From assembly GCF_001194135.2 (NCBI RefSeq), contig NC_068982.1:41909398-41973397 (forward strand): a stretch of DNA of 64,000 nucleotides, written 5' to 3'. A program made the translations under genes and the position numbers. This DNA comes from Octopus bimaculoides (taxonomy: Eukaryota). The notes under the pieces were generated by a model that was not told the origin of the DNA, did not search any database, and worked only from the letters and a program-made list of their open reading frames with translations. Each line of letters starts with the position of its first letter. Position 1 is the stretch's first letter. Below are positions 28,074 through 50,652 of the stretch, one piece after another.

Positions 28074-28375
28074 TCTGCTTTAATTTTGAGAGGACCGTCC
28101 TCCCCCACCTCTCCTGTGAAAGCTGTATTGTTTCACTTTACAGATTTCCCTTGGAGGCCTTGCATAGAGGTGCCATGAAGGTTTAAAGCTATTCAGTTGT
28201 TAATAATTGACATTAAAACTAAAAATATATGTGGTAACATGGTTTTCTGTAGTTAACATGTTCAGAATCGGTCATATTGTGAATATTGATGCACTTTGAG
28301 GCTTCCATAGTTAGTAAAATTTTTGCCGAAACCCGCAAGTATTTGTTTTTCAGAATATCTATTGCTGCGAGAACA

Positions 28376-28503
28376 ATGGAATCGTTCGGTGTTGTTGTGG
28401 TCGGTATTGGAATGGCTGGGCAAATACGTATTAGAGATTTACGGAACTTGCCTGCAGACAAACCAAATTTACAACGTTTGAAGCTTATCGGATACGTATC
28501 TCG
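28376..28503 (+). CDS. BLVRA: BLVRA coding exon 1 (MESFGVVVVGIGMAGQIRIRDLRNLPADKPNLQRLKLIGYVSR), NAD(P)H-binding Rossmann motif
   Basis: GxGxxG motif. Donor CG|GTTTGT at 28504. A splice-acceptor-like TTTGTTTTTCAG ends at 28353, 22 nt before the ATG. Confidence 0.95.
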
Positions 28504-28946
28504 GTTTGTAACCATAATTTTTATTTTTCAGTTCTGCAATTTAAATATTTTTTTCCCCATCCTGTTCATCACCGTACCTAAAAATAAAAAAAAAAGATGT
28601 AACTCATTTGGTTCCCCTCCCCCTCCAAAAAGGGACCCCCCCAAATAAACGCACCACACAAACCAAAACAAAAATACGCATTATAGGTTGGTAACCCCCC
28701 CCCATCCCACGTATTTCTTCATAACTTCACGAAAGACTCATATTTTAAAATGAAATTTTGCAGAGATANNNNNNNNNNATTTTTTTTTCCTTTTTATGTA
28801 AGAGTTTGTTTTCCAGATTTATGTCTAAAACATATCTCCAACCTCAAAATAGATGAGTTATGTAATCTGTATCCTTGAAAACGTATCTTTGCAAAATTCC
28901 ATTAAAAATATTCATTGCTTAGTAAATTGAGGTAGTTATGCAAATA

Positions 28947-28987
<41 letters not shown>

Positions 28988-30886
28988 TACTAACTGTTCA
29001 CAAACAAGAATAAATGGGAAATGCAAACGGACAAGTTAACGAGGGATACACCACACGGTCGTTTCTGCCTGTTAGAAATAGATGCCGAATCTCCCCTCGG
29101 ACTACATCCCTATTGTCTTAAAAAAATGAAAGACACCTTGTCATTGGATAACGTGGTCCCAAATACGCTGTTTGAATAAAAGCCGAGACGGTCAATGTTA
29201 GAACGTTTTTGATCATAGGTCTACAACATCAGTACAGAGCTGCAGCTAAACAACAAAAGCAAACGATTGTTATCATTAGAATTTTCCCGGAATAACAGCG
29301 ATTGCTTAAAATAATGCTCAGCGGAACGTTTAGAAGCAGCTATGAGTAACGATCTTTATTTACATGTACTCAGTTACATGTAGGAATGTGAATGAACAAA
29401 AGACTATAATGCATACACTTGTATTCAATCGACTAGATTTGTTTCCCAAACTTTTTCGGACGAACAAATTGGTTAGAACATATACAGGTAATACTGGCGC
29501 AAAATCGATTTTCCGGAATCTTTGATTGCGAATAAGTTACTGATTTTTCTGAACCAATGATGATTACACTCTAAATTAAATAAATATTAAAATATTAATT
29601 GAAGTACACAATTAAATGAAATACCAGTACCTGTACATTAGTGTAAATGATACAAGTATATTAATACTGTGATGTGCAAAGTACCAGTAAAATGGTCTGG
29701 CGGCCTGCTTGGAAATTAGTGCGGATTATAAGAGGTTCTGGACCATTAGTGTCTGGAAAGTGGGTGTTGTACTAATATTTACTTAACTAGCGTTTCTAAG
29801 TAAATGCGGTCAAACATCGCTTCGAATGCATTTATTTGAACGTGTGCAGGCGTATAAATGTATAAATGCCCGTTCCTTTTTAAGAACCTTCTGACCGTGA
29901 CTTTTTTTTCTTCACCCATGACCATTTTGTCTTTTGTTGGAGTTGTCGCGGGAAAGAAAAGGGCATGGAATTAGAAGGCAGAAATGTAAAAAAAAAAATT
30001 GAATATCGAATAGATATGATAGCACCAAATTCACGCGCGCACGCACTGTAGTCGCCAGCATTGCTAGAAACAGCAGCTACATTCCTCAATACATAAATTA
30101 ATATCTAGACGTAGAAATATTGGAAAACTAACATTGTTTGAATTAAGACGCAACACGTATTTCACCATAATATGATCGCCTGGAAAATAAAAGATGAAAT
30201 TGTCGTGTACGGAAATGCCTTCGATCACGAATCAGCTTGATCAGAACAGACTTACAGCTAAGCAACAATAAATAAGATCCTCGACGCAGTCACTAAATTT
30301 TTTCAGTATAGACATAAATTTCTACTTGGTGAAATGATAAGCCCCTGGCCTGGTAAGCCTTGATCCAGCAGACTTCTATGAGAAAAACTGTTTCAATAGT
30401 AATTTAGCTGCTATTTTTTTTGCAGAGGAGGTGACTGTGTAGAAGATTCCTCATCCACTTTAACTTTAGTAAACTGTATCATAAACTCATACCATACACT
30501 TGTTTGTAATCGGTTTCTTTTTTCACTCAAAGGTCCATAATAACACTGAAATCCACATTCAAATAAATATACTGAGGGAAAGTATTAACCTTTATCCAGG
30601 TTAATACTTTTTGTTATTATATTTCTGTCGGAATGCACTGTCATTGTTTCAATTAGTTTTTAAAATATTTTTTTCATCTTTTATCCTTTACTAATTTCAC
30701 TCATTAGACTGTGGTCATGCCGGATTTTTTAGTCAAATGAATTGCTCCAGTACTTAATTTTTTAAGCCTGGTACTTACTCTATCTGTCTCTTTTGCCAAA
30801 CTGCTAAGTTACGGGGACGTAAACACACCAACACCTGTTGTCAAGCAGTGGTGGTGGGGGGATAAACACACACAGACACACACACA

Positions 30887-30938
<52 letters not shown>

Positions 30939-33245
30939 ACATGCTTGTTTCAGTTTCCATTTGCTAAATTCACTCACGAGGCTTTGGTCAGCCCAAGGCT
31001 ATAGTGGAAGACACTTGTCCAAGGTGCCATGTGGTGTAGAATTTCATAAAATAACTTTGTCATTATTAAGCTTGAAAAAATCAACAGGGAATTTTAATGA
31101 AAAGTTCTACTTCAGATCACTTTAAAACAGGGAGTTTGGATCCTAGGAGCAGAGCCAGTCTCAGGTGGGTTGATATGGAAAGGTTTAAAGGTTTATAATT
31201 TAGTGCCAATTCATGTAAAAAGCACCCATGCTGGTGCCACATAAAGAGTGCCCAGCACACTCTGTAACAGGAGTCACCATACTTTTTTGACCATTGACCC
31301 CCTTTAGGCACTTCTTCTGTATCGACCACCCTCCTCATTTAAAATATCTTAATACTTTACCCTACTATACCATATCTTAAATGCGTACCGGGTACTGATG
31401 CTGGCAATTAAAATGTTAGCTAAAATATACATGTACGACAAATTAAGAAATTCTATTGAAAATGACACACTTTTTACATTTAAAATTACGTGTATGAGTA
31501 TACAGTATTAAACTTTCTATTTTTATGACATTATTTTCACGGTTAGAAAATGTGGAAAATGCATCATATTGCTGGAAGATCTTTTATTGAAATTGACAAC
31601 ATCAATGTGAGGGATGAGCATTGCGCTGACTAAGTATTTCAAGCAGTTCATCTGGGTGAGCTGGTCTTTCGCATGCTGACCCCCATTGAACCCCTTGGCT
31701 ATCATCGACCCCTGTAATTCCTCACCGACCCCTAGGAAGTTCCTCGGACCCCCTTTGGCAACTTCTGCTCTATAAAGTGGTTGGTGTTGGGAAGAGCATC
31801 CAACTGTAGAAACCAAGCTAGAACAGACTGGAACCTGGTCCATCTGCCAGCTCTGGTCAAACTGTCCAATCCATGCCAGCATGGAAAACAAACATTACAT
31901 GTTGATGATGATGATGATAAATCATGTTACTTCCAGAATTGCTGGAACCCATTCTTAAAGTTTGAGCTTCAACTCTTCATTGGGTTTTAATTCACTAATG
32001 CACACTTGCTCAAACACAATCCTAGATATGTGTGTTTGTGTGAGTGAGTTTAAATTTCCCTCTTCTTCTTGTGTGTTTGCTACTTGTAAAAAAAAAAAAA
32101 AATGATAGTGTTGCTTTGTCTCAGTCCACTGAAAAAGCCATGTCAAGGCTTCTTGACGCATCTTAACTATGTGTGTGGGCTTTTGTAAAGGTTGTTTGTT
32201 ATATGATAGACTGGGTGATAAATAACGCAGACAGCGGTTAGCAACAGTTTGAGCATCTGGCTGTAGAAAACTCTGACCCAATGTACTTGTGTGTGACCCA
32301 TGCAAGTATAGAAAAATAGATGTTAAAATAATGATGACAATGACAACGAGGAGGAGGAGGAGGATGAAATTTTTGTTTCCTCAATGTTCGAAAAACTGTC
32401 TAAAACTCAACCTGGTATTTTCATAGTGAGACTGTCTTCAAATTGTTTGCAAAAGCCCTCACATATTGTTTCTAAAGGATAACTGACCTGAAAGTTAACT
32501 TAATATATTTATTTTTTTCTCCCTGAATGAAAAGAGAAAAAAAAAAAAAAACTTTACATGTTTCTAGTTGCATTGGACAGAATATGCTTTGAAACAAATT
32601 CAGTTAAATTTCTTTTAGCTTGGAGTTCATTTAATTAAACTTGAAATATAAATCTGACATATAAGCTCCTTTACTTTTAAACTTCTAGTTATCTTGAAAT
32701 TACAAGGTTTTTATTTTTAAAGACTTCCAAAAAGACTCCAAAACTTGTCTTGAAAAGATCATAAAACTGACTCAGACAATCACCTTTCAATTAACCAGGA
32801 ATCTTCAGTGCAAAATAGCAATGAAATACTTAATTCTTTACAGTCCTATATTTAAGAGATGAGGAATTATGAACATTATGTACATTATTTACATTTGACG
32901 GATACTTGCTCTCATCTTGTTTGTTGTTAACACAACGTTTCGGCTGATATACCCTCTAACCTTCATTTAGCAGTATCTTTTTTAGCTGTGCTATGAATCT
33001 ATGGAAGCTGTCTGCCAATGAGGTAGTTCCTTTAGTTTCAGCTCTCATTATATTCGTAAGAGGAATTTCCTTTGCTTTAAAAATCTCTTCAGGTGAGGTT
33101 AGAAGTTTACTTCCAAACCACATGGTTTTGGGTTCAGTTCCACTGTGTGGCACCTTGGGCAACTGGATTCTATAACGTTGGGCTGGCCAAAATCTTGTGA
33201 GTGGGTTTGATAGACAGAAACTGAAAGGAACCTGTTGTGTGTATG

Positions 33246-33278
<33 letters not shown>

Positions 33279-36131
33279 CTATAACTTGATGTATGTATAT
33301 ATCTATGTGTGTGTGCCTTTGTATTTGTACTCTATCACTGCTTGACAACCAGTGTTGGGTTTGTTTACATCTTCATAACTCAGTGGTTTGCTAAGAGAGA
33401 CTGGTGGGCAATTATGGAGTGAATTTTAGGGCTTATAAATCTGACATGGATTAATTAAAATAATAAAAACTCTTCATGCAACAGATGAGGTTCCAGTGTT
33501 TAACTCTTTTTATTAGCCAATCAAAGGCAGCAAACTGGCAGAATCATTAGCATGACGCGCAAAATGCTTTGTGACATTTCTCCCAGCTTTACATTTTCAA
33601 ATGTCACAAAGATTGACTTTACCATTCATACTTTTGGATTGATCAAATATCAGTTGACCAATGTCAGTTGATCAATGTAATCAATTAGCCTTTTTCACAG
33701 AAATTTCAGATCTTGTGCCTATAATAGAAAAAATTAGCTAGTCACAGACCAATACTCTGGTAGTCATTTTGGCTATATTAAGCTGAACTAAAAAAGAATT
33801 TCTCTCTATTTCACTTGGCACCCAGCAGCCATGAGCAAATTGTTGCCTGTCATTGCTCCTTCAAAAAGAATCACCACCAGAAATCCTATTTCTATTCTAT
33901 ATCAGATAGTCTCAGTACAATCATATTTTAGCTGACTGAAATGCTAAATTGCCATATCTCTTTTTGCCGGATTATGTATCTTGATAATGCTATTTCCATA
34001 CCATATTAATTATTCAATTAACTTAATTAACTTGCACCAGCATGAATATATGCATGGTATGTCTTCTACAAATACATTGATGCAAATTTTATTCTCATTA
34101 ATGTTGTCTAATCAAACTTGTTATTCTTCACTGAATGCATTACTATCTAATTTAAACCTGTACTTCTCAATCATTATAAGGACACTGACTACTTTAAATT
34201 CTAGTGTCCCTTTAGGGGTTTTTAAACAGGAATAAAAAAAAATGTTGTAAGAAGCTTGCTTCCCAACCACATGGTTTTGGATTCAGTCCCTCTGCATGTG
34301 CATACTTGGGCAAAATATTTTGAGGAAGACAGGCAGTTACCTAGTCATGCAAGTCTCCTCTCTCAATGCAACTGATGTATATCTGAGGGAGAGGTCACTG
34401 GCTTCAATACAGCTTAGCACCCATGTCATCATAGGTGTTGCTGTCAGAACCAACCCAGAATTGGAACAAATTTAGCAAAGTATCTTTCCTAACCCTGTAA
34501 CAGTTTTGTTAATCCACTGCTTTGGATTAGTACTTTTTCTATACAACCTAAAAGGGTGAAAAGCCAACTTGACTGCAATAGAATTTCAGATTAAAGTTCA
34601 AAGAATCAGAACAAGTATTATAAAGCCTTTTATCCAATGCTTTAATGGATTCTGCAAATTGGCTGCCTTCCTGTGAGACCCTTCAGTGTGTGTGCCATAT
34701 TTCCCAATGTACGAGTTAACATAATGTATAGTGTAAAACATTCAAACATCATCGCTATCTTTCCAAATCTTCCAGCATTTCACATGGATTTTTTGATCCA
34801 CTATAGTTGTTTTGGTGTATAAGTTGACCTACCTTTTATGGCTGTAAATTTTGGTTTGAAAAATTTGATTTGTATGCAGGATAATACAGTATTTCATATG
34901 TACAATGTTCTTCTGAGGGGTTTCCCTCTTTCAGTAATATTTTCATCAAATGAGATTGATGTTACAAATTTGTTAACTCTTCATCCAATTAATGTATTGA
35001 TTTTTATTTGGAACTGTTTTTTCCAGACGCAAGCTTGACCTAGATTTGTTGTCTTTGACCTTACAAGAGGCCTTGAATCGATCTGATGTTCATGTTATTA
35101 TAATTTGTACTGAAGCAGAGGCACATGAAGAGACAATTAGGTAAGTTTTTGCTATTTTGCATGAATTCCATTCCAACTTTTGTTGAAAAAATAAGATTTT
35201 GGGCTAATTAATTTGTTCAGTGAAACCATGTTATATACACTAACACACATCTATCTCATGTTACCATCCACTAAGTTGTGTGTACGCGTGTATGTATGGA
35301 GTTATGTAGCTTATTGGTTAGGGTATTTGGCTTATGATCATAAGTTCGTGGGTTCAATTCCTGGTGGCATGTTGTGTCTTTGAGCAAGGCACTATATTTC
35401 ATGTTATTCCAGACCACTCAGTTGGCAAAAATGAGTAGTGCCTGTATTTCAGAAGGGCCAGTCTTGTCACATTCTGTGTCATGTTGAATCTCCCTGTGAA
35501 CTACATTGAGAGTATATGTGTCTGTGGAGTACTCAGCCTCTTGCACGTTAATTTCATGAGCGGGCTGTTCCATTGATTCGATCACCTGGAACCTTCGTTG
35601 TCATAATGACAGAGTGCCAGTATTCTATATATATATATATATGTGTGTGTGTGTTTGTGTATATAGGCACATGCATGGCTGTGTGGTTGCTTCCCAACCA
35701 CATGGTTCTGAGTTCAGTCCCACTGCATGGCACCTTGGGCAAGTGTTTTCTACTAAAGCCTGTTTGACTGGAAACTGGTAAGCTGGAGGGCTGCACCAGG
35801 TTCCAGTCTGATTTGGCATGGTTTCTAGAGCTGGATGCCCTTCCTAATGCCAAACACTCTGAGAGTGTAATGGGTTCTTTGTATGTGCCACTGGCACAGG
35901 TGCCATTTATATGACACTGCCAACGGCAACAACTACAATTTCACTTGGCTTGATGACTCTTCTCAAGCATAGCATATCACCAAAGGTCTTTATCACTTGT
36001 CATCACCTGTAAGGCCCGACATTCGAAGATCATGTTACCAGCAACAGCCACAATTATGATTTCATTGGTGACATTCACAAGACACTAGCAACAGCCACGA
36101 CTACGATTTCACTTGGCTTGACAAGTCTTCT

Positions 36132-36169
<38 letters not shown>

Positions 36170-39100: not shown

Positions 39101-42100
39101 ACTGATAGAATAAGTACTAGACTTACAAAGAATAAGTCATGGGGTCGATTTTTTTGACTAAAACCCTTCAAGGTGATGCTGCAGCATGACCACAGTCAAA
39201 GGACTGAAACAAGTAAAAGATTAAAAGAATGTAATCAAGTTTTAGATTACGTGTAGTTTCCTTGTCCTATATATGTTGTGAGAATTTTTGAAAAAGATTG
39301 TTTCATTTAAAGGGAATAGCAATTGCTGCTTGGAAGTCAAACCAGATATAACCCTGACATTTACCCTTGAATAAAGTTGCATAGTTAAAAATAGCTAGAT
39401 ACAAAGGTAATTGTTAGTTAGCTATACAGCATAAACATGCATTGATTGTACTTCAACCAAATATACTGTATAACTGATTGTAGAAATAAAAAATATGCAG
39501 ACGAACTAAACTCCATATTCATTGTAATTGTTTTGGATTTACACTCCAAAGTGAACCTAAGATTTACCTATCAGATGAGTTACAGTAGGATTGTTCACCC
39601 TAAGTAATCCTTGGTGCTCCTTACAATTCAATGTGGTTGCCTGAAGCCAGATTATAACTGAGTGTTCATACAGTACCTGCTTGGATAATTGATCCCTATA
39701 TTCTCATTATATGTATATCATCATTATCATCATCATCATCATTTAGTGTCCATTGTCCATGCTGGCATGGGTTGGATGGCTTGACCAGGGCTAGCAAGGT
39801 GGAAGGCTGCACCAGACTCCAGTCTGATTTGGCATGGTTTCTATGGCTGGATGCCCTTCCTAACACCAACCACTCTGAGTATGTAATGGGTGCTTTTACA
39901 TGCCACCGGCATGGGTGCCATTTGCGTGACACTGGTATCTGCCAGACTGCATTTTACTATTCTGTTGTTCAACATTATCAGATATCCTCTACTTCCCCAC
40001 TCACCTCTGGCCCCTCTGCCCCACTCATTCCCACCCACCTTGTATCGTGAAGGTCTACCATAACACCTCATATTTTTTATCTTTTTCTAGCTCCACCTGA
40101 TCACTTTGTGTGAAATGTGAGTGGTCATGTAGCACCTCTGCAGCAAGAAATCTGTTCTGTTCTGGCCATTTTCTCTCATACTTTACATCTCTTTGCTCCT
40201 TATCTCCCAGAATAAAGTTGCCTTGACCCCTACCCGTCAGATTTGTAGTCTTGCAAGCTGCATGGTGACCTCAATTGTGCTGGTGGTATGAAAAAAAAAA
40301 ACCACTCAGTACATGCTATAATGTGGTTGGCATGAAGAAGAGCATCCAGCCATAGAAACCATGTCAAAGTACACACTGGAGCATGATGCACTTCTTGGAT
40401 CCACCAGATCCTGTCAAAACTGTCCAACCCATACCAGCTATAATATAGACATTAAATGATGATGATGATGATGATGTCTCATCATAAACTCTATAGCAAT
40501 GTCTTAACACTGTAGCCACTGTTCCTTACTAATAACTATATCTTACTGATAATCTAACATAGATGTAATAGCAAAAATGTAAACCATTTTTTAATATAAA
40601 ACTATTATTGATTACAGGAAATCATTGGAGGCTGGGAAGCATGTATTGGTAGAATATCCAATTGTTATGAACGTTACAGTGGCAAAAGAACTCTATCAGA
40701 TGGCTTCTAGTAAAGGTGCTATATATTATGTTTGTTTTTCCCTTTTTAACTTTTCAGTTTTATTGAATTCATAGATCAGAATATCATTTTAATACTTTCA
40801 GAGATGTGGAGTCAACCAATTTCAAGTTAAAGAGCTTCTATTAAGCCTCTTCAGAAAAAGAAAAAAAAAATCAGTTTAACATTTGTCCTTAGGTCATCGA
40901 TCACTGACTTATGTTGAATGGTTCATTCTTCATGAGGGTAATACTTAGTATTACATTCATCTATCTGTCTTATTTCCTGGTGATTGTAAAGTTTCTTGGA
41001 TTTGCATGTTCACTTGATTGGGTGGTTATCAAGTTAATGTTGCAAATAGTTTGGTCATTTGAAGCAATGTATTGTAAGTTGTACCAAGTGTAGCATATAC
41101 ATTTACCTATTATTTAAGCATAATAATTCACTCAGTATTCAAATATAAAGAATAAGGGCTATGCAAAGGGTGGCCATTTTGTATTATAAAGGGTAAAGAC
41201 CTGCTTTGGTCATGAATGACCATGAGATTGCACCAAGAAAGTTACACTCTGAGACACATGTCCGGGCAAGGTTATTTATAGAAGACCAGCAGTCGTCCAT
41301 GCATACCAGCCTTCCCTCTCCACACCACTAGTGTTATCCAATGGAAAGGCAATGATCAATACAGCTTGCACCAGTGATGTTGCAACTCATTTTTAGAGCT
41401 GAGTGAACTGGAGCAACATCAAATAAAATGTCTTGCTCAAGAACACAACACACAGCCTGATCCAAGAATCGAACTCACTACCTCATGATTGCGAGCCTGA
41501 CGCTTTAACCCCTGAGTCATGTGCCTTCACATTTTTTAATTATAAATATATGTAAAATATTGGTTTCAAATGTTGGCACAAGGCCAGCAATTTCAAGTGA
41601 GGCAGTAAGCCGATTATATCAACCCAGTGCTCAACTGGTACTTATTTTATCGATCCCGAAAAGATGAAAAGCGAATTGGAGCTCGGTAGAATTTCAACTC
41701 AGAATATAAAGACAGATGAAATGTCACTAAGTTTTTTTTGTCTGGTGTGCTAATTATGTGTAAAATACTGTCAGTAAATATGACAATTAACCCATTAACT
41801 TTTATCAACCAAAACCTAAAATGTTTTATTTTATGATAAAGTGAATAGTGGGTAAATATATATATGCTGCACCCAGTGTATACTTTGTAAAATTATATAT
41901 AAACATCACTTATAAAATTTTGGCAATGTACTTGTCTGGCTATGCACACACACACGCATGCACACACACATATACACACACATGCATATGCTTATATGAT
42001 AGACTTCTTTGAGTTTCCATCTACAAAACCCTCTCACAAGGCTTTTTTGTTGGCCTGGGGCCCTAGTAGAAGACACTTACCCAAGGTGCCATGCAGTAGA

Positions 42101-45017
42101 ACTGAACCTGAAACCATGTGGTTGGGAAAAAAACATTACACAACCCCATTTATACCTATGAGAAGTCTACTAATTAAATGTAATAGGTTTATGTTAACAT
42201 TTTAAAAATTTCAAATTCTAGATTTCTCTATTTTTGCCAGTAGAAATTTTTGCATTATTTTTTCAAAGCCTGTCCATTTTATACAACTTTCATACTATTT
42301 TAGTATTTTATTAAATTACACATTGTACAGGTGTGGTTCTTCATGAAGAAAACATTGGATTGCTTTCCCTTGCTTTACTTCAGCTGAAAAAAGATTTAGA
42401 AAATAAACCACCTCTGCAGGAAGCACAGCTTGCTCACCATGGTAATTTTAATTTTTTATGTTTTAAATATCATCATCATTATCGTCATCACATCATCATA
42501 TCCATCATGATAACCACTAATTTACTGTATTTTCCAGCATTCAAGTTGAAATTTTCAGGCCAAAATTTACCACTAAAAAATGTAGGTTGACTTATACACA
42601 AGACAACTTTGGAGGACCAAAAATTCCATGTGACATGTAGCAGGATTTTGAAAGATAGCATCAATGTTTGAGTGTTTATACTATATACTATATTCACTTC
42701 AGTACCGCCTGGCTGGCCTTTGTGCCAGTGGCATGTAAAAGCACCCACTACACTCTCGGAGTGGTTGGCGTGAGGAAGGGCATCCAGCTGTAGAAACTCT
42801 GCAAAATCAGATTGGAGCCTGGTGTAGCCATTGGGTTTCACCAGTCCTCAGTCAAATCGTCCAACCCATGCTAGCATGGAAAGCGGACATTAAACATGGA
42901 TGATGATAATGTTCACTTGTATGTTGGAAAATGCAGTAATAATTCCTTGGTTACCAGGAAGTATTTCTTGGTGTTTTCTATTGTCTCTGTCTTCAAATTT
43001 ACATTTTAAAAAGTAATTTAGTCCTTTTCAGGGCTTCTCAAACTGATTGGAGGAAGCAAAAAAGTTAACCACACACTAGATTCCATACTTGAATGTATGC
43101 AGCAGCAAGTACTCTGCTAAAAACACTCAAAGGCAAATATTGGTATTAAACTAAATCATAGATTAAGTCTGTCTCTCAAGAACAAGAACTACCCCTTTGA
43201 TGGTCTTCTTGCTGTTTCATCCTTATCAAATTTCACCCACAAAACTCTAGTTGACACCATACTATGGTAGAGGACAGTTGCCCATTGAGTCATGATATAC
43301 AATTGGTCCTGAAACCACATAAGTTGTAAAGCAAATTTCTTCCCCATGCAACTGTATTTTTACCCAAACTGTATCATGCAATACAAAGGGTGTTGCATGA
43401 TTCTAACATATTAGTTATGCTTGACTGATGTTTCTATATTAGGGCATTGAGTTATTTTAATTTTCATCCATCCATCCGTCCATCCATCTTTACTCACTAT
43501 TCTTTGGAGGGTCATTGTGGGTAGGGTCCTCAGACATCTTCCTCCATAGGATCCTATCAGATGCAACCATCATGAGACCTGCCAGCTGGATTTTCAGTCG
43601 TGACTGACTGAGACTATGGTTACTATCCAGCCGTCTCATTCTTGGTCTACCCCTAGGTCTCCTGCCAGTTGGCTCAGCTTGAAGAACTTGTCTTACATTT
43701 CTATTCTGAAACATTTTAATCTCATGTCTATAGTACCTGACATGAGATCTATCAATATAAAGAACTTGCAGCTCAACTTGGAGGAGCTCCCTGACTTTTG
43801 AGTTATGTGCCATATTGAGTAATGTTACTCTGGAGATCCTATGAAGGAACCACATTTCTGCAGCTTGTATTTGCAATTATACTCATTTGGCCATTACCCA
43901 ACATTGGTGATCTTTAGTAAGGATTGACATATAAACTGAATTGAAGATAGGAAGTTTTAATTTGTATTAGATTGATATTTTGTATTTTCTAAGTATGAAA
44001 TTGTAATGATTCTTTTTTTGATTATCTTTAAAATGTTTACAACTTTCATCTATGTTTTCTTCTTTCCAAGTTTCATTGGGGAGATTGAGTGAAAATATGA
44101 CCAAAGAGAAGACACCTTTTATTGCACACCAGAGCATGGTAAAAGCAGCTATATTTTTGTTTGAGAATTTAACGGCTGTTGGAGGGCAATTTACAGAGAA
44201 GGACGATTGTTTTGAAGCCATTGCTGACCTAAGAACATCAGAAGACAAGTAGGTGAAATGTTTACAAATCCTTCCTTCCTCCTTCCTTCCCTCCCATCAT
44301 ACAAGTGATGTAATTCATTTGCACTCTTCTGGGAAAACATTTTATGGTCAAGGACAGCTATTACTTTACTTGGAACTGGTAAAGATTGGTAAAAAGAAGG
44401 ACATCTGACTGTAAAAATCAGCCTTAATGAATTCTGCTTGACCTATACATGCATGGAAGAGTGGACATTAAAATTCAACATATAATCAAATGTGCCATGA
44501 ACATCTCTTGTTTTAGATGTATTTCCAATGTGACTTCTGAGTTTTAAGACAGTTGGATGTAATTTGAAGGAGATTTGGTAGTTATTTTTAGCAGGCTGTA
44601 TGACCACACAAGGATCTCTCTTTGGTTTTATGGTGTATATAAGATTGCATTTTGCATGTACAATATAAATGGAAGGTCAGTTGAATGAGTTGGTGATGTG
44701 TTTTTCACAATCTTAGTTTCTGATTGCAAGAGAGATAACTCTGTCAATACAGACATCTACTTAGAGTCGATTGCGTCAGTTGTATGAGAAATAGTATGCA
44801 AGAGTGAGCAGCCAAAACCTATAACATGTGCTATCTCAGTTCTATATTTAAGAGATGAAGAATTATGTACGTTATTTACAATTGACAGATATTTGTCTTC
44901 ATCTTGTTTGTTGTTAACACGTTTCAGCTGATATACCCTCCAGCCTTCATCAGGTGTCTTGGGGGAAATTTCGAACCTTGGTTCTCATTTCTAAGACATT
45001 TTTCGATGTTGTTGTTG

Positions 45018-45064
<47 letters not shown>

Positions 45065-45140
45065 GGCGTAGTGGTTAAGAGCTCTGGCTACTAACCCCAA
45101 GATTCCGAGTTCGATTCCAGGCAATGACCTGAATAATAAC

Positions 45141-45172
<32 letters not shown>

Positions 45173-45546
45173 TAATGATAGTAACAACAACAACATTGAA
45201 AAGTACCTTAAGAATGAGAACCCAGGTTCGAAATTTCCCCAAGACACCTGATGAAGGCTGGAGGGTATATCAGCTGAAACATTGTGTTAACAACTAACAA
45301 GATGAGGACAAATATCCATCAATTGTAAATAGTGTAAATAATGTGCTATCTTATTTAACAAAGTTTTCTTTTGTTGTTTCTGGCCAGGACCATACTGATT
45401 TCTTGGAGTATGTTGGAACTTAAATCATGTCTCCATTTTTAAAATGACAATCTTTTGAGGCTGGTATTAGGCACAGGGCATTAAATTATAAAATGTTGCT
45501 TCAAATAAATCCCTTTACAAACTGCAGAAAAATAGATGTTTTATAT

Positions 45547-45580
<34 letters not shown>

Positions 45581-47774
45581 CTTTATGATGTGGTGCTCAA
45601 GTACAAGAAAATACCAGATATATTAGAGGTCAATATAGTACATTGCTTTAAACTCTGTAGATCCACATGTACAGTGCTTATCAGAGTACAATACTGCATA
45701 TACTGCAGAATGGGCTACAACAGATATGAACAGAGGAAAACATTTGGAAAAACAACAGAAAACAATACCAGTGATTTTAGTAGTGTATGAATGAATATTT
45801 TGAAATATTCATACAACACAGATATTGTTTTTTGTTGTTATGTCAAATATATGTGTGTGTGTGTGTACCATGTAACCACACATGCTTTTCTTGGACTATT
45901 CTTTTCCATCTCTTCAGATCATTCCTCTTTTCTCTTTCTGATGCTTGAAGCATCACCCAACTCTTTTCTCCATCTTAAACTGAGTGTCAGCCTAACACAT
46001 GCACTGTATATGTCCTTCTGACACTTTTGTCATTTTTGTTTTATTTTTGATTTGGCTTTATATATTTGTGAACAGTGAGGAAATTTATAAATCATTTAGA
46101 TTATGTTGAAGGGGTTATTAAAACATAATTATGTTTTGTATATGTTTAATTAATGTGTCCTTGTTTACTTATTTTATATCTTGTCTATGAACTGCTAAAG
46201 TTGATTTTTTTCACTTGAAAATACTTATAACTTATGTTCAACTTTGCCCATTTTTCTTTAGCCATTTTGATTCAATCTGAATTTTTTCTTCAATATTCAG
46301 GAAAGTTCAAATGAAACTGTGCTTGTTTAAAGAAAAAGGTATTTGGAAAAAAGAATACTTCCTGAAGTTTAACGATGGGAGTGTTATTGATAAACTTCCA
46401 CCAGAACTTGTAAGGAAAACCAGATCTGGACTTGGTATGTGTTTACCTCTGTATTCTTTTTTTTTTATACTGTTGAAGAAATAATAATAATAATTTCATT
46501 GTGTAACAACTCTGTATCACAGAATTGATTTTTTAAAAACTTTGATACCTGGATATAGTGTTCTCAGATAACACTGTGTAACATGATATTTGTTCTTGGG
46601 TAGCAACTGTTATTTCCTATTAGCTTACCCCTAGAAAGTATGAAAAATGGCTAATATTTCCTTCAAACTTTGCTTTTGTTACATTTATTCAAACCTCAGC
46701 AATGCACCTATTGTCAAACTACTAAGGGACATGTTGAAGTGGTTAAAGTCAAGCAAGTGACAAGCAAATCTGTGGTATTGAGCAGTGTATTTGCTCTAAT
46801 GATATTTCTGCTTCAGCAACTCAACACTAAGTTTGTCTGAAATGTAATAGGAAATAGGTCAGTTTCAAAACATTAATGTCCACATTACAAAAGCAAAGTT
46901 TGAAGGGAATAGTAGTCATTAGCTTTGATTTCTAGATAGAAGCAAATAGGAAATAATACTTACTGACCCAAGACAAAAAAAAAAAAAAGTAACACAACAC
47001 AATCTAAATTTAGCTAACAAAGAAAATAATTGAAACTAGAAAAATTCAGAGGAGAACAATAATATTTTTAACTACTACAGCAAAATGAATGTTTGTTATT
47101 AATTAGCAAAATCATTAGAGCATTGGACATAATGCTTTGTGGTCTTTAGTTATGCACTTTACATTTGAGTTCTATTGCTGCTGAGGTCAACTTTGCTTTT
47201 TATCTTTCCAGGATGTTATAATTATTGGATGACAGTTTATATAATTCATGTGGCAGTTCTTTCTGAATGTCAACATTTACCTAGTTTACCTCAAATTCAT
47301 GTTATTGGCTTATTTGAGTTCTTTCCTTTGGACTCATTTTGTTTAATAGTACTCTTGTAACTTTAGCAGTCAGATTTCAACTTGTAACCTTACCTTACAT
47401 GATTTTGTATTATGTACTAAAATAGAACTCAACACTAACAATCCTTTCTACTATAGGCACAAGGGGGCTAGTTGATTACACCCCCACCCCAGTACTTAAA
47501 TGATACTTATTTTATTGACTCTGAAAGAATGAGAGGCAATGTTGACCTAGGTGGAATTTGAATTCAGAATGTAAAGCTTAAAGAAATTCCACTAAGCATT
47601 TTTTCGAACATGTTGACAATTCTGTCAGTTCACTGCCTTAAACAATGTACTAATAATATTTATGAGTATTTGGTCACATTTATACAGAACAACAATGACA
47701 GATCATGATGACAAGTCAGTCAAGCAGGAGTCTATTTCATATGTAGATAATGAAAACTGTTATTAAATATATGT

Positions 47775-47823
<49 letters not shown>

Positions 47824-48146
47824 NNNNNNNNNNNNNNNNNNNNNNNNNNNNNNNNNNNNNNNNNNNNNNNNNNNNNNNNNNNNNNNNNNNNNNNNNNNNN
47901 NNNNNNNNNNNNNNNNNNNNNNNNNNNNNNNNNNNNNNNNNNNNNNNNNNNNNNNNNNNNNNNNNNNNNNNNNNNNNNNNNNNNNNNNNNNNNNNNNNNN
48001 NNNNNNNNNNNNNNNNNNNNNNNNNNNNNNNNNNNNNNNNNNNNNNNNNNNNNNNNNNNNNNNNNNNNNNNNNNNNNNNNNNNNNNNNNNNNNNNNNNNN
48101 NNNNNNNNNNNNNNNNNNNNNNNNNNNNNNNNNNNNNNNNNNNNNN

Positions 48147-48188
<42 letters not shown>

Positions 48189-49266
48189 TGTCCCTAAATA
48201 TAACTAAGATGTTAGAAACACCCACATTGCTAGAAATAAGAGCTAAAATGCTCTAATGCTTTAATCAAAGCACATAATTGTATACATATATACTGACTCC
48301 CACCCACATTAGCATTGAAGGCAGATGTTAAATGTCGATGATGATGATGATATACTGAGTTCTCCTTTTTGGTAAAACTTTGCATATTGCTGTCTATATT
48401 AATTTTCTGTATATGGATTAGTGATTCGCTAAATCATCCATTGGTTTTTATATTGAAAACATATATACTGACAGAATTCAGTCTGAAATCTGCTGAAGTT
48501 GAGCCTGTCCTTACTGACAAGGCAATGGAAATTGCAAAACTGACCAGTTAGTATAAGGAATTCTTGATCAGTGTTTTTGGGTGATTATAGTCCCTGTCAG
48601 TATATGTATACAATTATGTGCTTTGACTACAGATGTCATAGCTGAAGGTCTTGGCACTTCAGCCAAAAGATTGTTAGTTTTATTTTTCTCTCTTGCACTT
48701 TATGCTTACAGGCTCAACCTGCTTCATAGAATATATGTAGCAAGAGGACTTATAAACTCATTGAGGAATATGTCAACGGATAGTGCTTTGAATCAAATTT
48801 CCCCATTGACTACTGGGAATAGACTAGGTGTGAACTGGTTTAGCTGTGACATACTTTTAATTTCCATTTGTAGTTAATTCACTTTAAATAAGCTCTAATT
48901 CTCCTGAAAAGTGTAAATGCACCATAGATTGCATTCACTCTTCAAATAAAAGTTTTTGGCATTATGCATACAGGAAAACAAGTAGGAAACCATTGTTGCA
49001 TAACTTTCCCCCAAAATGCTAGAACATAATGTTTATTTCTAGAACTAGATTTGAAAACAATACCTTCAAAATTGGAAGGTGTGTGTGTATGCATGTGTAT
49101 TTTATTTTAAAAATGATTTGCATATTATTTTTTCCTTGTAGGAATGTTTATGGAAGATCTCCTTCACTTTTCTGAAAAATTACTTGGAGTAAGAGATGTC
49201 CATGACACAGAAGAATTGACTATAAAAACGATCGACCTTATTGAAAAGGTTCATAGTTATTTCTAA
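28376..49266 (+). CDS. BLVRA: Biliverdin reductase A-like protein, 7 coding exons (28376-28503, 35027-35140, 40618-40715, 42331-42441, 44071-44248, 46301-46434, 49142-49266), 888 nt = 295 aa + stop
   Basis: All introns are GT-AG, phases join (2,2,1,1,2,1) and there are no internal stops. The protein is colinear with human BVR-A (296 aa): FGVVVVGIGMAGQIRIRDL, LIGYVSRR, AGKHVLVEYP, LHEE, LFENL, MFMEDLLHFSEKLLG. Confidence 0.95.
35027..35140 (+). CDS. BLVRA: BLVRA coding exon 2 (RKLDLDLLSLTLQEALNRSDVHVIIICTEAEAHEETIR)
   Basis: TTTCCAG| acceptor, AG|GTAAGT donor, 114 nt. Aligns to human [28 protein letters not shown]. Confidence 0.93.
35315..35620 (+). mobile_element. Further tRNA-headed SINE family; copies at ~13915-14230, 14425-14550 and related 41200-41530(-)
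   Basis: Shared head (GGTTAGGGT...GTTCAAT(T/A)CCTG...TTGAGCAAG.CAC) and body (CCACTCAG.TGG.AAAAATGAGTAG). Confidence 0.7.
36930..38135 (+). mobile_element. RTE-clade LINE reverse transcriptase fragment in BLVRA intron 2
   Basis: ORFs 37162..37551, 37587..37775 and 37776..38297 give NYRGIKLL, QFGFVPGRST, AFVDLEKAFDRVP, GVYQGSVLSP and LLYADDL. It is cut off at an inverted SINE near 38140. Confidence 0.93.
40618..40715 (+). CDS. BLVRA: BLVRA coding exon 3 (KSLEAGKHVLVEYPIVMNVTVAKELYQMASSKG)
   Basis: TTACAG| acceptor, G|GTGCTA donor, 98 nt. Contains the AGKHVLVEYP motif of the Gfo/Idh/MocA-BVR family. Confidence 0.95.
42331..42441 (+). CDS. BLVRA: BLVRA coding exon 4 (VVLHEENIGLLSLALLQLKKDLENKPPLQEAQLAHH)
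   Basis: TGTACAG| acceptor, G|GTAATT donor, 111 nt. LHEE motif; overlaps ORF 42333..42590. Confidence 0.92.
42700..42910 (+). mobile_element. (GAT)n-tailed SINE/LINE-tail family. Other copies: ~1-230(-), 300-440(-), 6040-6270, 8330-8545, 11320-11470(-), 15620-15805(-), 31770-31920, 35770-35900(-), 39720-39920(-), 40270-40480, 50190-50480(-)
   Basis: Shared AAAAGCACCC...AGGAAGGGCATCCAGC...CCATGC(T/C)AGCATGG...(GAT)n. Explains the many ...WLDALP... ORFs in the ORF track. Confidence 0.85.
43455..43900 (-). mobile_element. RTE (Expander-like) LINE 3' fragment with (GGAT)n tail, BLVRA intron 4
   Basis: ORF 43490..43876 (QAAEMWFLHRI...GRRPRGRPRMRRLD); (CATC)n at 43465-43487. Confidence 0.85.
44071..44248 (+). 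CDS. BLVRA: BLVRA coding exon 5 (SLGRLSENMTKEKTPFIAHQSMVKAAIFLFENLTAVGGQFTEKDDCFEAIADLRTSED)
   Basis: TCTTTCCAAG| acceptor (AAG, the only nearby in-phase AG I found) and AA|GTAGGT donor, 178 nt. SMVKAAIFLFENL aligns to human SRLTWLVSLFGEL. Confidence 0.85.
44841..45340. mobile_element. Palindromic composite: tRNA-like head flanked by two inverted arms carrying hammerhead-ribozyme-like motifs
   Basis: A box TGGCGTAGTGG and B box GAGTTCGATTCC at ~45063-45120. Arms at ~44874-45060 and ~45140-45330 are reverse complements, each with CTGATGA-stem-GAAAC. A solitary arm copy is at ~32840-32970. Confidence 0.75.
46301..46434 (+). CDS. BLVRA: BLVRA coding exon 6 (KVQMKLCLFKEKGIWKKEYFLKFNDGSVIDKLPPELVRKTRSGL)
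   Basis: TATTCAG| acceptor, G|GTATGT donor, 134 nt, in phase. Aligns to human EKGPGLKRNRYLSFHFKSGSL. Confidence 0.88.
47765..48185. repeat. (AT)n microsatellite spanning an assembly gap
   Basis: (AT)n on both sides of the N run. Confidence 0.95.
49142..49266 (+). CDS. BLVRA: BLVRA coding exon 7 (GMFMEDLLHFSEKLLGVRDVHDTEELTIKTIDLIEKVHSYF*)
   Basis: TTTCCTTGTAG| acceptor, TAA at 49264-49266. Aligns to human IFLKDQNIFVQKLLG...GLAEEIQKY. Confidence 0.92.
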
Positions 49267-50652
49267 TGCAAAATTTCGAATTTATATTCCTCTGGAAATT
49301 GTAGGCTTAACTCTTTAGCATTCAGATTACTCTGTCAAATGTAATGCTTATTTATTCACTTTGTTTTAAATTAATCATGCATTATCTCATAGGTTTTGAT
49401 GATGTGATTGTTTATTTTTAGAATGACATTTTTGGGTAGGTGTGAGAGGCCAGATCTGTCTGGTCTGAACATAAAACAGGTAGAATATTTTTGTCAGATA
49501 TGGTTGGTTTAAATGCTAAAGGCTTAAGAATTTCTAGAAAGGACTTACTGGGAGCTATATTAGCAGGGTTGATGAGGAAAACAAAAAAAATGTTCTTAAT
49601 TTTTCTCGATGGCAAACTTCTTTCGAGATTAAATGAGAAAGAATTTTCGTAATTTCTGGACATTTGAATCGCATTTAATTCCAAATACTCAATTTTTGAA
49701 AGAATTTTATCTTTCCCTTTTGATCTCAGGACAAATACTCAATTTTTGCGGGAATTTTATCTTTTTTTTTCTTTCATCCATGATGAAGGGACATCTGATG
49801 CATAATACTCACAAAATATTATTACTCTGGTATATGTATTTTCCAAATTCTAACTCCTCCCCTCCAAAAAGAAGAGAAAGAATCATGTATGTTACTTGTG
49901 CATATTTTAGTATTGGAAAAGTATCTACTTTGTAAATCAGCCTCCCTGAACATGCTAACTTTGATGACTCTCTGTTTCTTGGTTGTTGCCAATACATTTC
50001 ATGGCAACCCTGAATTACAATATATATAATGCAATAAGATTTTTAACATTAGCTTATAGTAGTTGCATGCTTTGGGTGAGGAAGAAGTTAATTAATCCAT
50101 CACTTGACAGATTTATTAAATAGTTTCCAGTAGAACCAAAGACAAGTTGACACTGCCATGATTTAAATTCTATACATAAAAAATTCTTATCATCATCATT
50201 TAATGCCCATTTTTCATGCTGGCATGGGTTGGATGGCTTGATGGAAGGTGGCAAGCCAAAGGGCTGCAGGCTGCAGTTGTCTGTTTTGGCAAGGTTTCTA
50301 TGGCTGGATGCCCTTCCTAATGTTGACTACTTTAGAGTGTACTGGGCGTTTTTTACATGGTGTCAGCATGAGTGTTTCTCTTTACGTAGCACTGGCATGG
50401 GTGCATTTCTATGCAATGCCACCACAGGTGCTTCCTTATGTGGTACCAGCACAGGTGCTTTTTACATGGTGCTGGCATCTGATCTTGAAAGAAGTCTGCC
50501 ATCAAGAAAAATTAAGAACATTCCTTTGTTTTTCTTTTTTTTTTTAACATCAGACCCTACTATTATAGCTCCCAGTACGTCCTTTCTGGGAATTCTTAAG
50601 CCTACAATTTCAAGAGGAATAAAAATGGGAAATTTTATGTTAAAAATAACTA
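49254..50652. repeat. Long inverted repeat: left arm 49254-49310 + 49524-49629 (split by a MITE), right arm 50482-50652
   Basis: By-eye alignment: the outer 57-nt block matches ungapped with about 8 mismatches, and the inner block is also visible as a LERSLPSRKIKN peptide in both ORFs 49418..49684(-) and 50229..50699(+). Confidence 0.85.
49311..49523. mobile_element. TTAA-targeting (piggyBac-like) MITE; further copies at ~1634-1867 and ~6369-6592
   Basis: Ends of the form C(C/T)CTTTAGCATT...AATGCTAAAGG with TTAA duplicated at 49307-49310 and 49524-49527. The three copies share internal sequence. Confidence 0.75.

What the first reader, a model, noticed from the sequence alone, without database searches (positions are those of the whole stretch)
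28376..49266. Intact biliverdin reductase A homolog in an octopus, with Met at the position of the catalytic Arg
Seen: the spliced 295-aa protein keeps the NAD(P)H-binding GxGxxG, E93-Y94-P95 (human E97-Y98-P99) and LHEE. However, QSMVKAAIFLFENL aligns without gaps to human ISRLTWLVSLFGEL, so M173 (ATG 44136-44138) replaces Arg172. Also human E127 becomes G123, R18 becomes M13, and the KRNRY basic patch becomes WKKEY. Established: Arg172 (and its equivalent in cyanobacterial BvdR) is implicated as the proton donor and substrate-binding residue, and cephalopods carry oxygen with copper haemocyanin, not haemoglobin. Inference: the gene is intact but may be a pseudoenzyme, or a reductase for a different substrate such as another bilin or pigment. 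That would be an undescribed branch of the BVR family.
Basis: partly seen in the sequence, partly recalled or inferred. Interest (0 to 1): 0.72.

Follow-up and report, generated by a model that had tools for sequence, protein, structure and literature searches.

The report
Octopus biliverdin-reductase homolog lacking catalytic arginine
This is the intact, selectively maintained octopus copy of the biliverdin reductase A gene. It lacks the arginine that the vertebrate and cyanobacterial enzymes need, but so does every mollusc, worm and stony-coral copy found, so the oddity belongs to large invertebrate groups, not to octopus.

Summary
Seven GT-AG exons on the + strand (28376-49266) give a 295-aa protein, and Met173 is ATG 44136-44138. 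Both assembly gaps lie in introns, and their flanks are colinear with the gap-free O. vulgaris locus.

The protein is the Octopus bimaculoides BLVRA ortholog, which RefSeq already names "biliverdin reductase A". The AlphaFold2 model has pLDDT 95 and superposes on human BLVRA (2H63) at TM 0.88-0.91.

The cofactor and hydride-transfer residues are kept. The Arg172 position is not Arg. This is not special to octopus:
- Arg is absent in 0/5 cephalopods, 0/19 other molluscs, 0/4 annelids and nemertean, 0/9 unnamed invertebrate transcripts and 0/11 stony-coral-type sequences.
- Arg is present in 60/60 vertebrates, a sea anemone, the unicellular holozoan Syssomonas and 8/9 bacterial-like relatives.

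Cephalopods have also turned two more near-universal arginines into Leu218 and Trp225.

The gene is under purifying selection: dN/dS is 0.33 between two Octopus species and 0.08 between two decapodiform transcripts.

Most likely it is still an NAD(P)H-dependent reductase, but its de-charged pocket does not carry out the canonical Arg-dependent reduction of biliverdin IXα. This is untested. The haemocyanin argument is weak, because octopus expresses haem oxygenase.

The parts
28376..28503 (+). Exon 1 (codons 1-43, phase-2 end). It holds the start ATG, the Rossmann GxGxxG (G10-G15, 28403-28420) and S42-R43 of the S-R-R motif.
   Evidence: tblastn with human BLVRA gives E 2.5e-8. The same exon is present in O. 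vulgaris. The upstream ATG at 28289 used in longer database models is GTG in O. vulgaris.
35027..35140 (+). Exon 2 (R43 third base to R81). It holds R44 and the invariant H76.
40618..40715 (+). Exon 3. It holds G87-K88-H89 and E93-Y94-P95 (40652-40660), equivalent to human E97-Y98-P99.
42331..42441 (+). Exon 4. It holds L117-H118-E119-E120 (H118-E120 at 42342-42350). Asn121 (42351-42353) replaces human His125 and Gly123 (42357-42359) replaces human Glu127.
44071..44248 (+). Exon 5. It holds Met173 (ATG 44136-44138) at the position of human Arg172 / Synechocystis Arg185. It also holds K175 (AAA 44142-44144) and Leu156 (44085-44087), where other invertebrates have the Trp of an N-G-W motif.
   Evidence: The AF2 model puts residue 173 at the start of helix 171-181.
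46301..46434 (+). Exon 6. It holds the cephalopod-specific Leu218 (46323-46325) and Trp225 (46344-46346), at columns that are Arg in nearly all other family members.
49142..49266 (+). Exon 7, with the stop codon TAA at 49264-49266. It encodes the C-terminal helices, including Arg272, a basic residue conserved in invertebrates but not in vertebrates.
28769..28778 (.). Assembly gap inside intron 1. It is not coding.
   Evidence: The flanks map to O. vulgaris L001 positions 3370 and 3416.
47824..48146 (.). Assembly gap inside intron 6, within a (TA)n microsatellite. It is not coding.
   Evidence: The flanks map to L001 positions 22617 and 22942.

Best explanation
Shown:
- The locus is the Octopus bimaculoides ortholog of BLVRA: a seven-exon gene encoding a 295-aa two-domain protein with the biliverdin reductase fold.
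- It belongs to an Arg-less form of the family found in all lophotrochozoans sampled and, independently, in stony corals.
- It keeps the dinucleotide-binding and hydride-transfer side: GxGxxG, the S-R-R motif, K88, E93-Y94-P95 and H118-E119-E120.
- It has lost the Arg172/His125/Glu127 set of the vertebrate and cyanobacterial enzymes.
- In cephalopods two further near-universal arginines of the C-terminal sheet and loop have become Leu218 and Trp225.
- The gene is kept by purifying selection.

Inferred:
- It still binds NAD(P)H and works as a reductase.
- Its pocket has lost the arginines that hold and protonate the bilin propionates. So it does not carry out the efficient, Arg-dependent reduction of biliverdin IXα to bilirubin.
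- It acts instead on a different, or differently bound, less anionic substrate. That could be another bilin isomer or ester, or a non-bilin acceptor.
For: Homology and fold:
- The best solved relatives are human and rat BLVRA (E 3e-23; profile E 1e-111).
- The AF2 model has pLDDT 95 and pTM 0.91. Foldseek gives TM 0.88/0.91 and rmsd 2.2 A to 2H63, with cyanobacterial BvdR next.

Identity:
- The protein is 100% identical to O. bimaculoides entries. RefSeq XP_014786015.1 is named 'biliverdin reductase A'.

Residue pattern:
- Cofactor-side residues are invariant across 119 sequences, octopus included.
- Arg172 is present in 60/60 vertebrates, Actinia, Syssomonas and 8/9 bacterial-like sequences. 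It is present in 0/48 lophotrochozoan and coral-type sequences.
- Leu218 and Trp225 occur in 5/5 cephalopods. Those columns are Arg in 19/19 other molluscs.
- The column of Leu218 corresponds to Synechocystis Lys237, a residue within about 3.5 A of bound biliverdin.

Importance of the Arg:
- See PMC5309722.

The C-terminal domain has diverged:
- The octopus protein gives no Pfam PF09166 match at E<=1. A primate scores 165 bits, Acropora 51 and Aplysia 24.4.

Selection and expression:
- ω is 0.33 between O. bimaculoides and O. vulgaris (16 synonymous, 20 non-synonymous changes; p=0.002).
- ω is 0.083 between two decapodiform mRNAs (108 synonymous, 54 non-synonymous; p about 1e-33).
- Contiguous 1.1-1.8 kb transcript contigs exist for Sepia and another decapodiform.
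- A 'biliverdin reductase' is highly expressed in Euprymna symbiotic organs (PMC12773714).

Context:
- Before tentative Raman signals in a pearl oyster, bilirubin was described as not yet detected in invertebrates (PMC7998362).
Against: - No enzymology exists for any invertebrate member.
- Ala mutants of the Arg keep 2-4% of kcat/Km and 10-20% of kcat, so some biliverdin reductase activity could remain. The family might use solvent or another residue as the proton source.
- I could not measure distances in the model because its coordinates are not exposed. Whether K175, K226/K227 or the invertebrate-conserved R272 can reach the pocket is therefore unknown.
- Coleoid A-to-I RNA editing could recode AAA Lys codons (K175, K226, K227) to Arg. 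This was not tested.
- ω in Octopus (0.33) rests on only 36 substitutions.
- No alternative substrate has been identified.
Confidence: 0.5

Rival explanations
1. It is still a genuine biliverdin IXα reductase. The Arg-less animal enzymes take the proton from solvent, from the substrate propionates or from another residue, and octopus makes bilirubin or a related rubin.
For: - All hydride-transfer and cofactor residues are kept.
- R172A and R185A mutants retain measurable activity.
- Octopus expresses HMOX1, so the substrate exists.
- There are tentative Raman signatures of bilirubin in Pinctada shells.
- Purifying selection is strong.
Against: - R172K and R172E abolish activity in human BVR, so the site is not tolerant.
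- The position is hypervariable in the Arg-less clade: 13 different residues, including Asp and Glu. This argues that nothing there takes part in catalysis.
- Cephalopods have also lost two more pocket arginines to Leu and Trp.
- The C-terminal domain no longer matches the Pfam BVR catalytic model.
Confidence: 0.27
2. It is a pseudoenzyme. The fold is kept for a non-catalytic role such as protein-protein signalling, like the non-enzymatic BVRA-Nrf2 function reported in mammals, or as a bilin- or nucleotide-binding sensor.
For: - The residue essential in characterised BVRs is lost, along with its neighbours.
- A non-enzymatic role of mammalian BVRA has been reported (bioRxiv 10.1101/2025.06.04.657936).
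- The gene is under selection, so it does something.
Against: - GxGxxG, S-R-R, K88, E93-Y94-P95 and H-E-E are strictly conserved across roughly 500 My or more of Arg-less evolution. This is hard to explain without cofactor binding and chemistry.
- Pseudoenzymes usually erode these motifs.
Confidence: 0.15
3. It is an artefact or a dying gene: a mis-assembly across the N gaps, a wrong exon 5, a sequencing error at codon 173, or a pseudogene.
For: - Two assembly gaps lie within the gene span.
- ω in Octopus is moderately high (0.33).
Against: - The gaps are intronic and their flanks are colinear with a gap-free congener.
- O. vulgaris has identical exon structure and an open frame.
- Decapodiform cDNAs align end to end without gaps at the exon junctions.
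- No octopod has Arg at the site.
- The excess of synonymous change is significant (p=0.002).
- The AF2 model is highly confident.
Confidence: 0.03

Closest known systems
Vertebrate biliverdin reductase A (BLVRA, EC 1.3.1.24; human P53004, PDB 2H63; rat 1GCU/1LC0)
   Same: - It is the ortholog-level best match, at 31-40% identity over the full length.
- It has the same two-domain fold (TM about 0.9).
- It has the same length, about 295 aa.
- It shares GxGxxG, S-R-R, K92, E97-Y98-P99 and H122-E123-E124.
   Different: - Arg172 is Met, His125 is Asn and Glu127 is Gly.
- The Arg/Lys219 column is Leu and Arg225 is Trp.
- There is a 4-residue insertion before the conserved Pro, as in other invertebrates and cyanobacteria.
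- The C-terminal domain falls below the Pfam PF09166 threshold.
Cyanobacterial BvdR (Synechocystis, PDB 5B3T/5B3U/5B3V)
   Same: - The fold is the same (TM about 0.8).
- The E-Y-P and H-x-E motifs are shared.
- The loop before the conserved Pro has the same length class.
   Different: - BvdR has Arg185, which is essential, Arg188 and Lys237 contacting two stacked biliverdins.
- Octopus has Met173, Ala176 and Leu218 at those columns.
Arg-less BLVRA-like proteins of other lophotrochozoans and stony corals (for example Aplysia 'biliverdin reductase A', Haliotis, Pecten, Liolophura, Capitella, Tubulanus, Acropora)
   Same: - They lack Arg172, His125 and Glu127 in the same way.
- They keep the same cofactor-side residues.
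- Cephalopods nest with the chiton inside the mollusc group in a rough NJ tree.
   Different: - These relatives keep Arg at the 219 and 225 columns, and most keep the N-G-W motif.
- Cephalopods lost both arginines.
- Octopods (Octopus, Argonauta) also lost the Trp.
Other Gfo/Idh/MocA oxidoreductases (PF01408; for example YhhX, inositol dehydrogenases, KijD10)
   Same: The N-terminal Rossmann domain and the general α/β C-terminal sheet are shared.
   Different: They are much more distant: E 1e-4 or worse by sequence and TM about 0.7. They are not the family of best fit.

Membership tests
BLVRA / BvdR homologous family (biliverdin reductase fold) | N-terminal Gfo/Idh/MocA Rossmann domain with GxGxxG | tested here: met
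   Pfam PF01408 matches at E 3e-17 over residues 4-118. G10-x-G12-x-x-G15 is present.
BLVRA / BvdR homologous family (biliverdin reductase fold) | Overall two-domain fold superposable on solved BVR-A structures, which are the best hits | tested here: met
   AF2 gives pLDDT 95. Foldseek ranks 2H63, 1GCU, 1LC0/1LC3 and then 5B3U/V first, with TM 0.88/0.91.
BLVRA / BvdR homologous family (biliverdin reductase fold) | Closest sequence relatives are BLVRA proteins, full length | tested here: met
   Vertebrate BLVRA aligns at E 1e-30 to 1e-40 over more than 90% of the length.
BLVRA / BvdR homologous family (biliverdin reductase fold) | C-terminal 'Biliverdin reductase, catalytic' domain profile (Pfam PF09166) | tested here: not met
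   Octopus and a decapodiform give no hit at E<=1. Primate scores 165 bits, Acropora 51 and Aplysia 24.4, against a cut-off of 24.5. The fold of the domain is nevertheless conserved.
Functional biliverdin IXα reductase (EC 1.3.1.24) | Active-site E-Y-P (Tyr98) and H-E-E (Glu123/124) motifs | tested here: met
   E93-Y94-P95 and H118-E119-E120 are present.
Functional biliverdin IXα reductase (EC 1.3.1.24) | Catalytic and propionate-binding Arg (human R172, rat R171, Synechocystis R185), reported as completely conserved and essential | tested here: not met
   Octopus has Met173. The alignment is gapless in 73/73 sequences. The mutagenesis is in PMC5309722.
Functional biliverdin IXα reductase (EC 1.3.1.24) | Further basic residues lining the bilin site (Syn K237 column; human R225 column) | tested here: not met
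   Cephalopods have Leu218 and Trp225. The role of human R225 in binding is inferred from its conservation, not shown.
Functional biliverdin IXα reductase (EC 1.3.1.24) | NAD(P)H-dependent conversion of biliverdin to bilirubin | not testable with these tools
   This needs a recombinant enzyme assay.
Functional biliverdin IXα reductase (EC 1.3.1.24) | NADPH 2'-phosphate-binding S-R-R motif after β2 | tested here: met
   S42-R43-R44 is present. Its role is assigned from general knowledge of BVR-A cofactor complexes, not tested here.

The most novel reading that the evidence does not exclude
The Arg-less BLVRA-like proteins of lophotrochozoans, and convergently of stony corals, are a functionally distinct and undescribed subfamily. 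They are NAD(P)H reductases that gave up the Arg-dependent biliverdin IXα to bilirubin reaction and took on another substrate or role. This would help explain two things: why bilirubin is essentially unknown in invertebrates, and why biliverdin and other bilins accumulate there as pigments. Cephalopods would be a further step, with a fully de-charged pocket (Met/Leu/Trp in place of three arginines).
Probability: 0.35. Interest if true: 0.7.

Novelty: new variant of a known kind. Interest (0 to 1): 0.5.

Why it matters
[quoted passage not shown] Here about 48 animal homologues from molluscs, annelids, a nemertean and stony corals lack it, yet they keep the cofactor machinery and remain under selection.

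If these proteins are not biliverdin IXα reductases, three things follow:
- Automated 'biliverdin reductase A' annotations, and pathway inferences about haem degradation, antioxidant bilirubin cycling and shell or tissue pigment pathways, would be wrong across large invertebrate phyla.
- The question of whether invertebrates make bilirubin becomes directly testable with a handful of recombinant proteins and Arg-restoring mutants.
- A natural, repeated loss of the 'essential' Arg gives a comparative test of the disputed proton-donor mechanism of BVR-A.

Tried and rejected
So there is no direct O. bimaculoides RNA evidence. I used the O. vulgaris genomic ortholog and decapodiform transcripts instead.
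- The upstream in-frame ATG at 28289, used by the 324- and 331-aa database models, was rejected as the start. The codon is GTG in O. vulgaris, and the extension has no counterpart in other taxa.
- An alternative strong donor inside exon 6 (CTT|GTAAGG) was rejected. It would put exon 7 out of frame, with an early stop (reasoning).
- I first read the pattern as 'all non-vertebrate animals lack the Arg' and corrected it. The sea anemone Actinia tenebrosa keeps Arg, so the coral loss is independent of the lophotrochozoan loss.
- Strict coupling of the Arg172 loss with the His125/Glu127 losses was rejected. Actinia and several bacterial-like sequences have Arg without Glu127 or His125.
- Residue-level 3D distances (can K175, R272 or K226/227 reach the pocket?) could not be computed, because model coordinates are not exposed by the tools.
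- Literature searches for a description of BLVRA evolution in invertebrates or cephalopods found nothing relevant.
- The taxonomic origin of several Logan/IMG transcripts (P0008, P0013, P0122, P0123, P0126, P0128, P0138, P0150, P0154) could not be determined.
- No ecdysozoan, echinoderm, hemichordate, tunicate or amphioxus homolog surfaced. Absence is not proven.
- The NJ tree has no bootstrap support and is only a rough guide.

Full report
**1. What is in the sequence**

I rebuilt the gene from the raw window. Six-frame translation, tblastn with human BLVRA and inspection of splice sites give seven + strand exons, all with GT-AG introns. The exons are 28376-28503, 35027-35140, 40618-40715, 42331-42441, 44071-44248, 46301-46434 and 49142-49266. 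They total 888 nt, or 295 codons plus TAA.

The window has 35.5% G+C and seven runs of N. Two of these fall inside the gene span, and both are intronic: 28769-28778 in intron 1 and 47824-48146 in intron 6.

The program's note asked that continuity across the gaps be tested first. The flanks of each gap map colinearly and in the same orientation to the gap-free Octopus vulgaris locus L001. About 45 bp is missing at gap 1. About 325 bp is missing at gap 2, which lies in a (TA)n microsatellite. O. vulgaris has the same seven exons, the same junctions and an open 295-codon frame. The gaps therefore hide no coding sequence and do not affect the frame.

**2. Identity**

The protein is 100% identical to Octopus bimaculoides database entries. 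RefSeq XP_014786015.1 is already named 'biliverdin reductase A'.

Those database models are 324 and 331 aa because they start at an upstream in-frame ATG (28289). That codon is GTG in O. vulgaris, and the extension has no counterpart in other taxa.

The best solved relatives are human and rat BLVRA and then Synechocystis BvdR. An AlphaFold2 model built on a 56-sequence alignment has mean pLDDT 95 and pTM 0.91. Its best structural matches in the PDB are human BLVRA 2H63 (TM 0.88/0.91, rmsd 2.2 A), rat BVR and then cyanobacterial BvdR. Residue 173 sits at the start of helix 171-181. This matches the position of Arg185 at the start of helix α8 in BvdR.

**3. The residue pattern**

The cofactor and hydride-transfer side is intact: G10-x-G12-x-x-G15, S42-R43-R44, H76, K88, E93-Y94-P95 and H118-E119-E120.

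The alignment around the critical Arg is unambiguous. From the near-invariant Pro166 to the F181-G182 pair there is no gap in any of 73 sequences. Hence:

| Octopus | Human | Synechocystis |
|---|---|---|
| S172 | S171 | S184 |
| M173 | R172 | R185 |
| A176 | W175 | R188 |

Mutagenesis shows how much this Arg matters (PMC5309722):
- Synechocystis R185A and R185K keep about 2% of kcat/Km.
- Human R172A keeps about 4%, and R172K and R172E are undetectable.
- That paper calls the Arg completely conserved among BVR homologues.

- E127 to G123 is confirmed.
- R18 to M13 is confirmed but uninformative. That position is Ile or Met in many vertebrates.
- The KRNRY/WKKEY pairing is off by one. The gapless alignment anchored on invariant F233 puts Trp225 opposite human Arg225.

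**4. Is the loss lineage-wide?**

Yes, and far beyond octopus. I collected homologues with two word-indexed searches, one exhaustive HMMER search and one search seeded with the coral protein. I named them where possible. A 119-sequence alignment gives these counts:

| Group | Arg at the R172 column | Residues seen |
|---|---|---|
| Vertebrates | 60/60 | R |
| Syssomonas multiformis (unicellular holozoan) | 1/1 | R |
| Actinia tenebrosa (sea anemone) | 1/1 | R |
| Bacterial-like relatives | 8/9 | R, P |
| Cephalopods | 0/5 | M, M, I, L, L |
| Other molluscs (chiton, bivalves, gastropods) | 0/19 | varied |
| Annelids and a nemertean | 0/4 | varied |
| Unnamed invertebrate-like transcripts | 0/9 | varied |
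| Stony-coral-type sequences | 0/11 | D or Q |

Thirteen different residues occupy the site in the Arg-less sequences. O. bimaculoides (Met) and O. vulgaris (Ile) already differ there. The position therefore looks unconstrained once the Arg is gone.

Arg is evidently ancestral, because it occurs in bacteria, a holozoan, a sea anemone and vertebrates. It was lost at least twice, once on the lophotrochozoan side and once in stony corals.

Two further residues are conserved from cyanobacteria to vertebrates. They are His125, whose Synechocystis equivalent His129 hydrogen-bonds Arg185 in the apo enzyme, and Glu127. In the same invertebrate groups His125 is Asn/Asp/Ser and Glu127 is Gly/Ala/Ser/Leu.

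**5. What is special to cephalopods**

A screen for clade-specific changes (re-counted) found two columns:

| Column | Other groups | Cephalopods (5/5) |
|---|---|---|
| Human K219 (equivalent to Synechocystis Lys237, within about 3.5 A of bound biliverdin) | Arg in 19/19 other molluscs, Arg/Lys in 58/60 vertebrates | Leu218 |
| Human R225 | Arg in 19/19 other molluscs, 59/60 vertebrates, 11/11 corals | Trp225 |

Octopods (Octopus and Argonauta) have also lost the Trp of an N-G-W motif. That motif is 93% conserved in other invertebrates and lies in the loop preceding Pro166.

Consistently, the C-terminal domain of the cephalopod proteins no longer matches the Pfam 'Biliverdin reductase, catalytic' profile at E<=1. 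Acropora scores 51 bits, Aplysia 24.4 bits and a primate 165 bits. In cephalopods, then, three arginines on the substrate side have been replaced by hydrophobic residues.

**6. Is the gene alive?**

Yes.
- Between O. bimaculoides and O. vulgaris there are 16 synonymous and 20 non-synonymous differences. Nei-Gojobori ω is 0.33, and the excess of synonymous change has p=0.002.
- Between two decapodiform transcripts there are 108 synonymous and 54 non-synonymous differences. ω is 0.083 with p about 1e-33. One transcript belongs to the Sepia cluster. Both are contiguous mRNA-like contigs of 1.1-1.5 kb.
- The Sepia cluster is seen on dozens of transcript contigs.
- A 'biliverdin reductase' is reported as highly expressed in the symbiotic organs of Euprymna (PMC12773714). 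I could not check which gene that is.
- The decapodiform cDNAs align to the octopus model without gaps at the exon junctions. This supports exon 5 indirectly.
- Direct O. bimaculoides RNA evidence could not be obtained here.

**7. How it most likely works**

Shown: the fold, the intact cofactor side, the missing Arg/His/Glu set, the extra cephalopod losses and purifying selection.

Inferred: the protein still binds NAD(P)H and transfers hydride. Strict conservation of GxGxxG, S-R-R, K88, E-Y-P and H-E-E through hundreds of millions of years of Arg-less evolution is hard to explain otherwise. The pocket no longer offers the guanidinium groups that hold the bilin propionates and, in the 2017 model, supply the proton. 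I therefore favour a reductase with an altered substrate or binding mode and with poor canonical biliverdin IXα to bilirubin activity (confidence about 0.5).

The main rival is that it remains a true biliverdin reductase using another proton source (about 0.27). Ala mutants retain some activity, and octopus does express haem oxygenase 1 (PMC6635378).

A non-catalytic pseudoenzyme is possible but less likely (about 0.15), given the preserved cofactor motifs. The non-enzymatic BVRA-Nrf2 role reported in mammals is the precedent.

Artefact or pseudogene is essentially excluded (about 0.03).

One caveat is specific to coleoids. A-to-I RNA editing could recode the AAA codons of K175, K226 and K227 to Arg. 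This is an untested idea. Moreover K175 is two residues along the helix from position 173, not at the i or i+3 positions used by BvdR.

**8. Comparison with what is known, and novelty**

By homology and fold this is a member of the BLVRA/BvdR family and the ortholog of vertebrate BLVRA. As a functional biliverdin IXα reductase it fails a defining, experimentally validated feature, the Arg. It should not be filed as one without assay.

The gene itself is known and annotated. What appears undescribed is the broader pattern: the supposedly universal catalytic Arg is absent from all sampled lophotrochozoan and stony-coral homologues, and cephalopods have lost two more pocket arginines. I found no paper on this.

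A pearl-oyster study notes that bilirubin had not been detected in invertebrates before its own tentative Raman signals (PMC7998362). That fits a family-wide change of function but does not prove it.

I rate this a new variant of a known kind. Interest is moderate (0.5). The clade-wide pattern is a real, testable puzzle for the BVR mechanism and for invertebrate haem catabolism.

Noticed in passing
window 37162-38297 (+), inside intron 2: There are two adjacent ORFs of a degraded retroelement. The second (37776-38297) matches Pfam RVT_1 reverse transcriptase at E 6e-13. It runs into a short interspersed repeat at its 3' end.
   Followed up: partly
window 52144-52854 (+), downstream of the gene: A 236-aa ORF has a full reverse-transcriptase domain (RVT_1, E 7e-31, YIDDLL motif). 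It is probably part of an LTR-type retrotransposon pol. The neighbouring ORF 54181-54534 has no Pfam hit.
   Followed up: partly
window, about 20 sites, for example 318-392, 3909-3981, 15680-15777, 33107-33172, 35541-35860, 38227-38336, 38871-38938, 39796-39876, 42759-42856, 50238-50322: Fragments of 55-110 bp from one short interspersed repeat occur in both orientations at 74-91% identity, in introns and flanks. They produce recurring pseudo-ORF peptides such as '...LPKVPHSGTEPKTMW...' and '...CPRCHTVGLNPEPCGW...'. This looks like a SINE-type element.
   Followed up: partly
window 28286-28375 (+): Public protein models for this gene (UniRef A0A0L8FYE9 at 324 aa, RefSeq XP_014786015.1 at 331 aa) start upstream of the conserved Met. 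The upstream ATG (28289) is GTG in O. vulgaris, so the N-terminal extension is probably an annotation artefact.
   Followed up: yes
window 44920-45250, intron 5: Long trinucleotide-type simple repeats read as poly-Leu, poly-Asn or poly-Ile ORFs on both strands.
   Followed up: no
proteins P0144 (Syssomonas), P0373 (Actinia), P0136 and relatives (corals): The family has an odd phyletic pattern. The Arg-type occurs in bacteria, a unicellular holozoan, a sea anemone and vertebrates. The Arg-less type occurs in stony corals and lophotrochozoans. No ecdysozoan, echinoderm or invertebrate-chordate member surfaced in any search. A rough NJ tree groups Acropora with lophotrochozoans rather than by species phylogeny. 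I could not tell whether this reflects convergence, paralogy or long-branch effects.
   Followed up: partly
octopus residue R272 (window 49192-49194): A basic residue (Arg/Lys) is conserved in about 80% of invertebrate members and in all cephalopods, where vertebrates have Val/Phe. It is the only clade-specific gain of a conserved positive charge found. Its distance from the pocket could not be measured.
   Followed up: no
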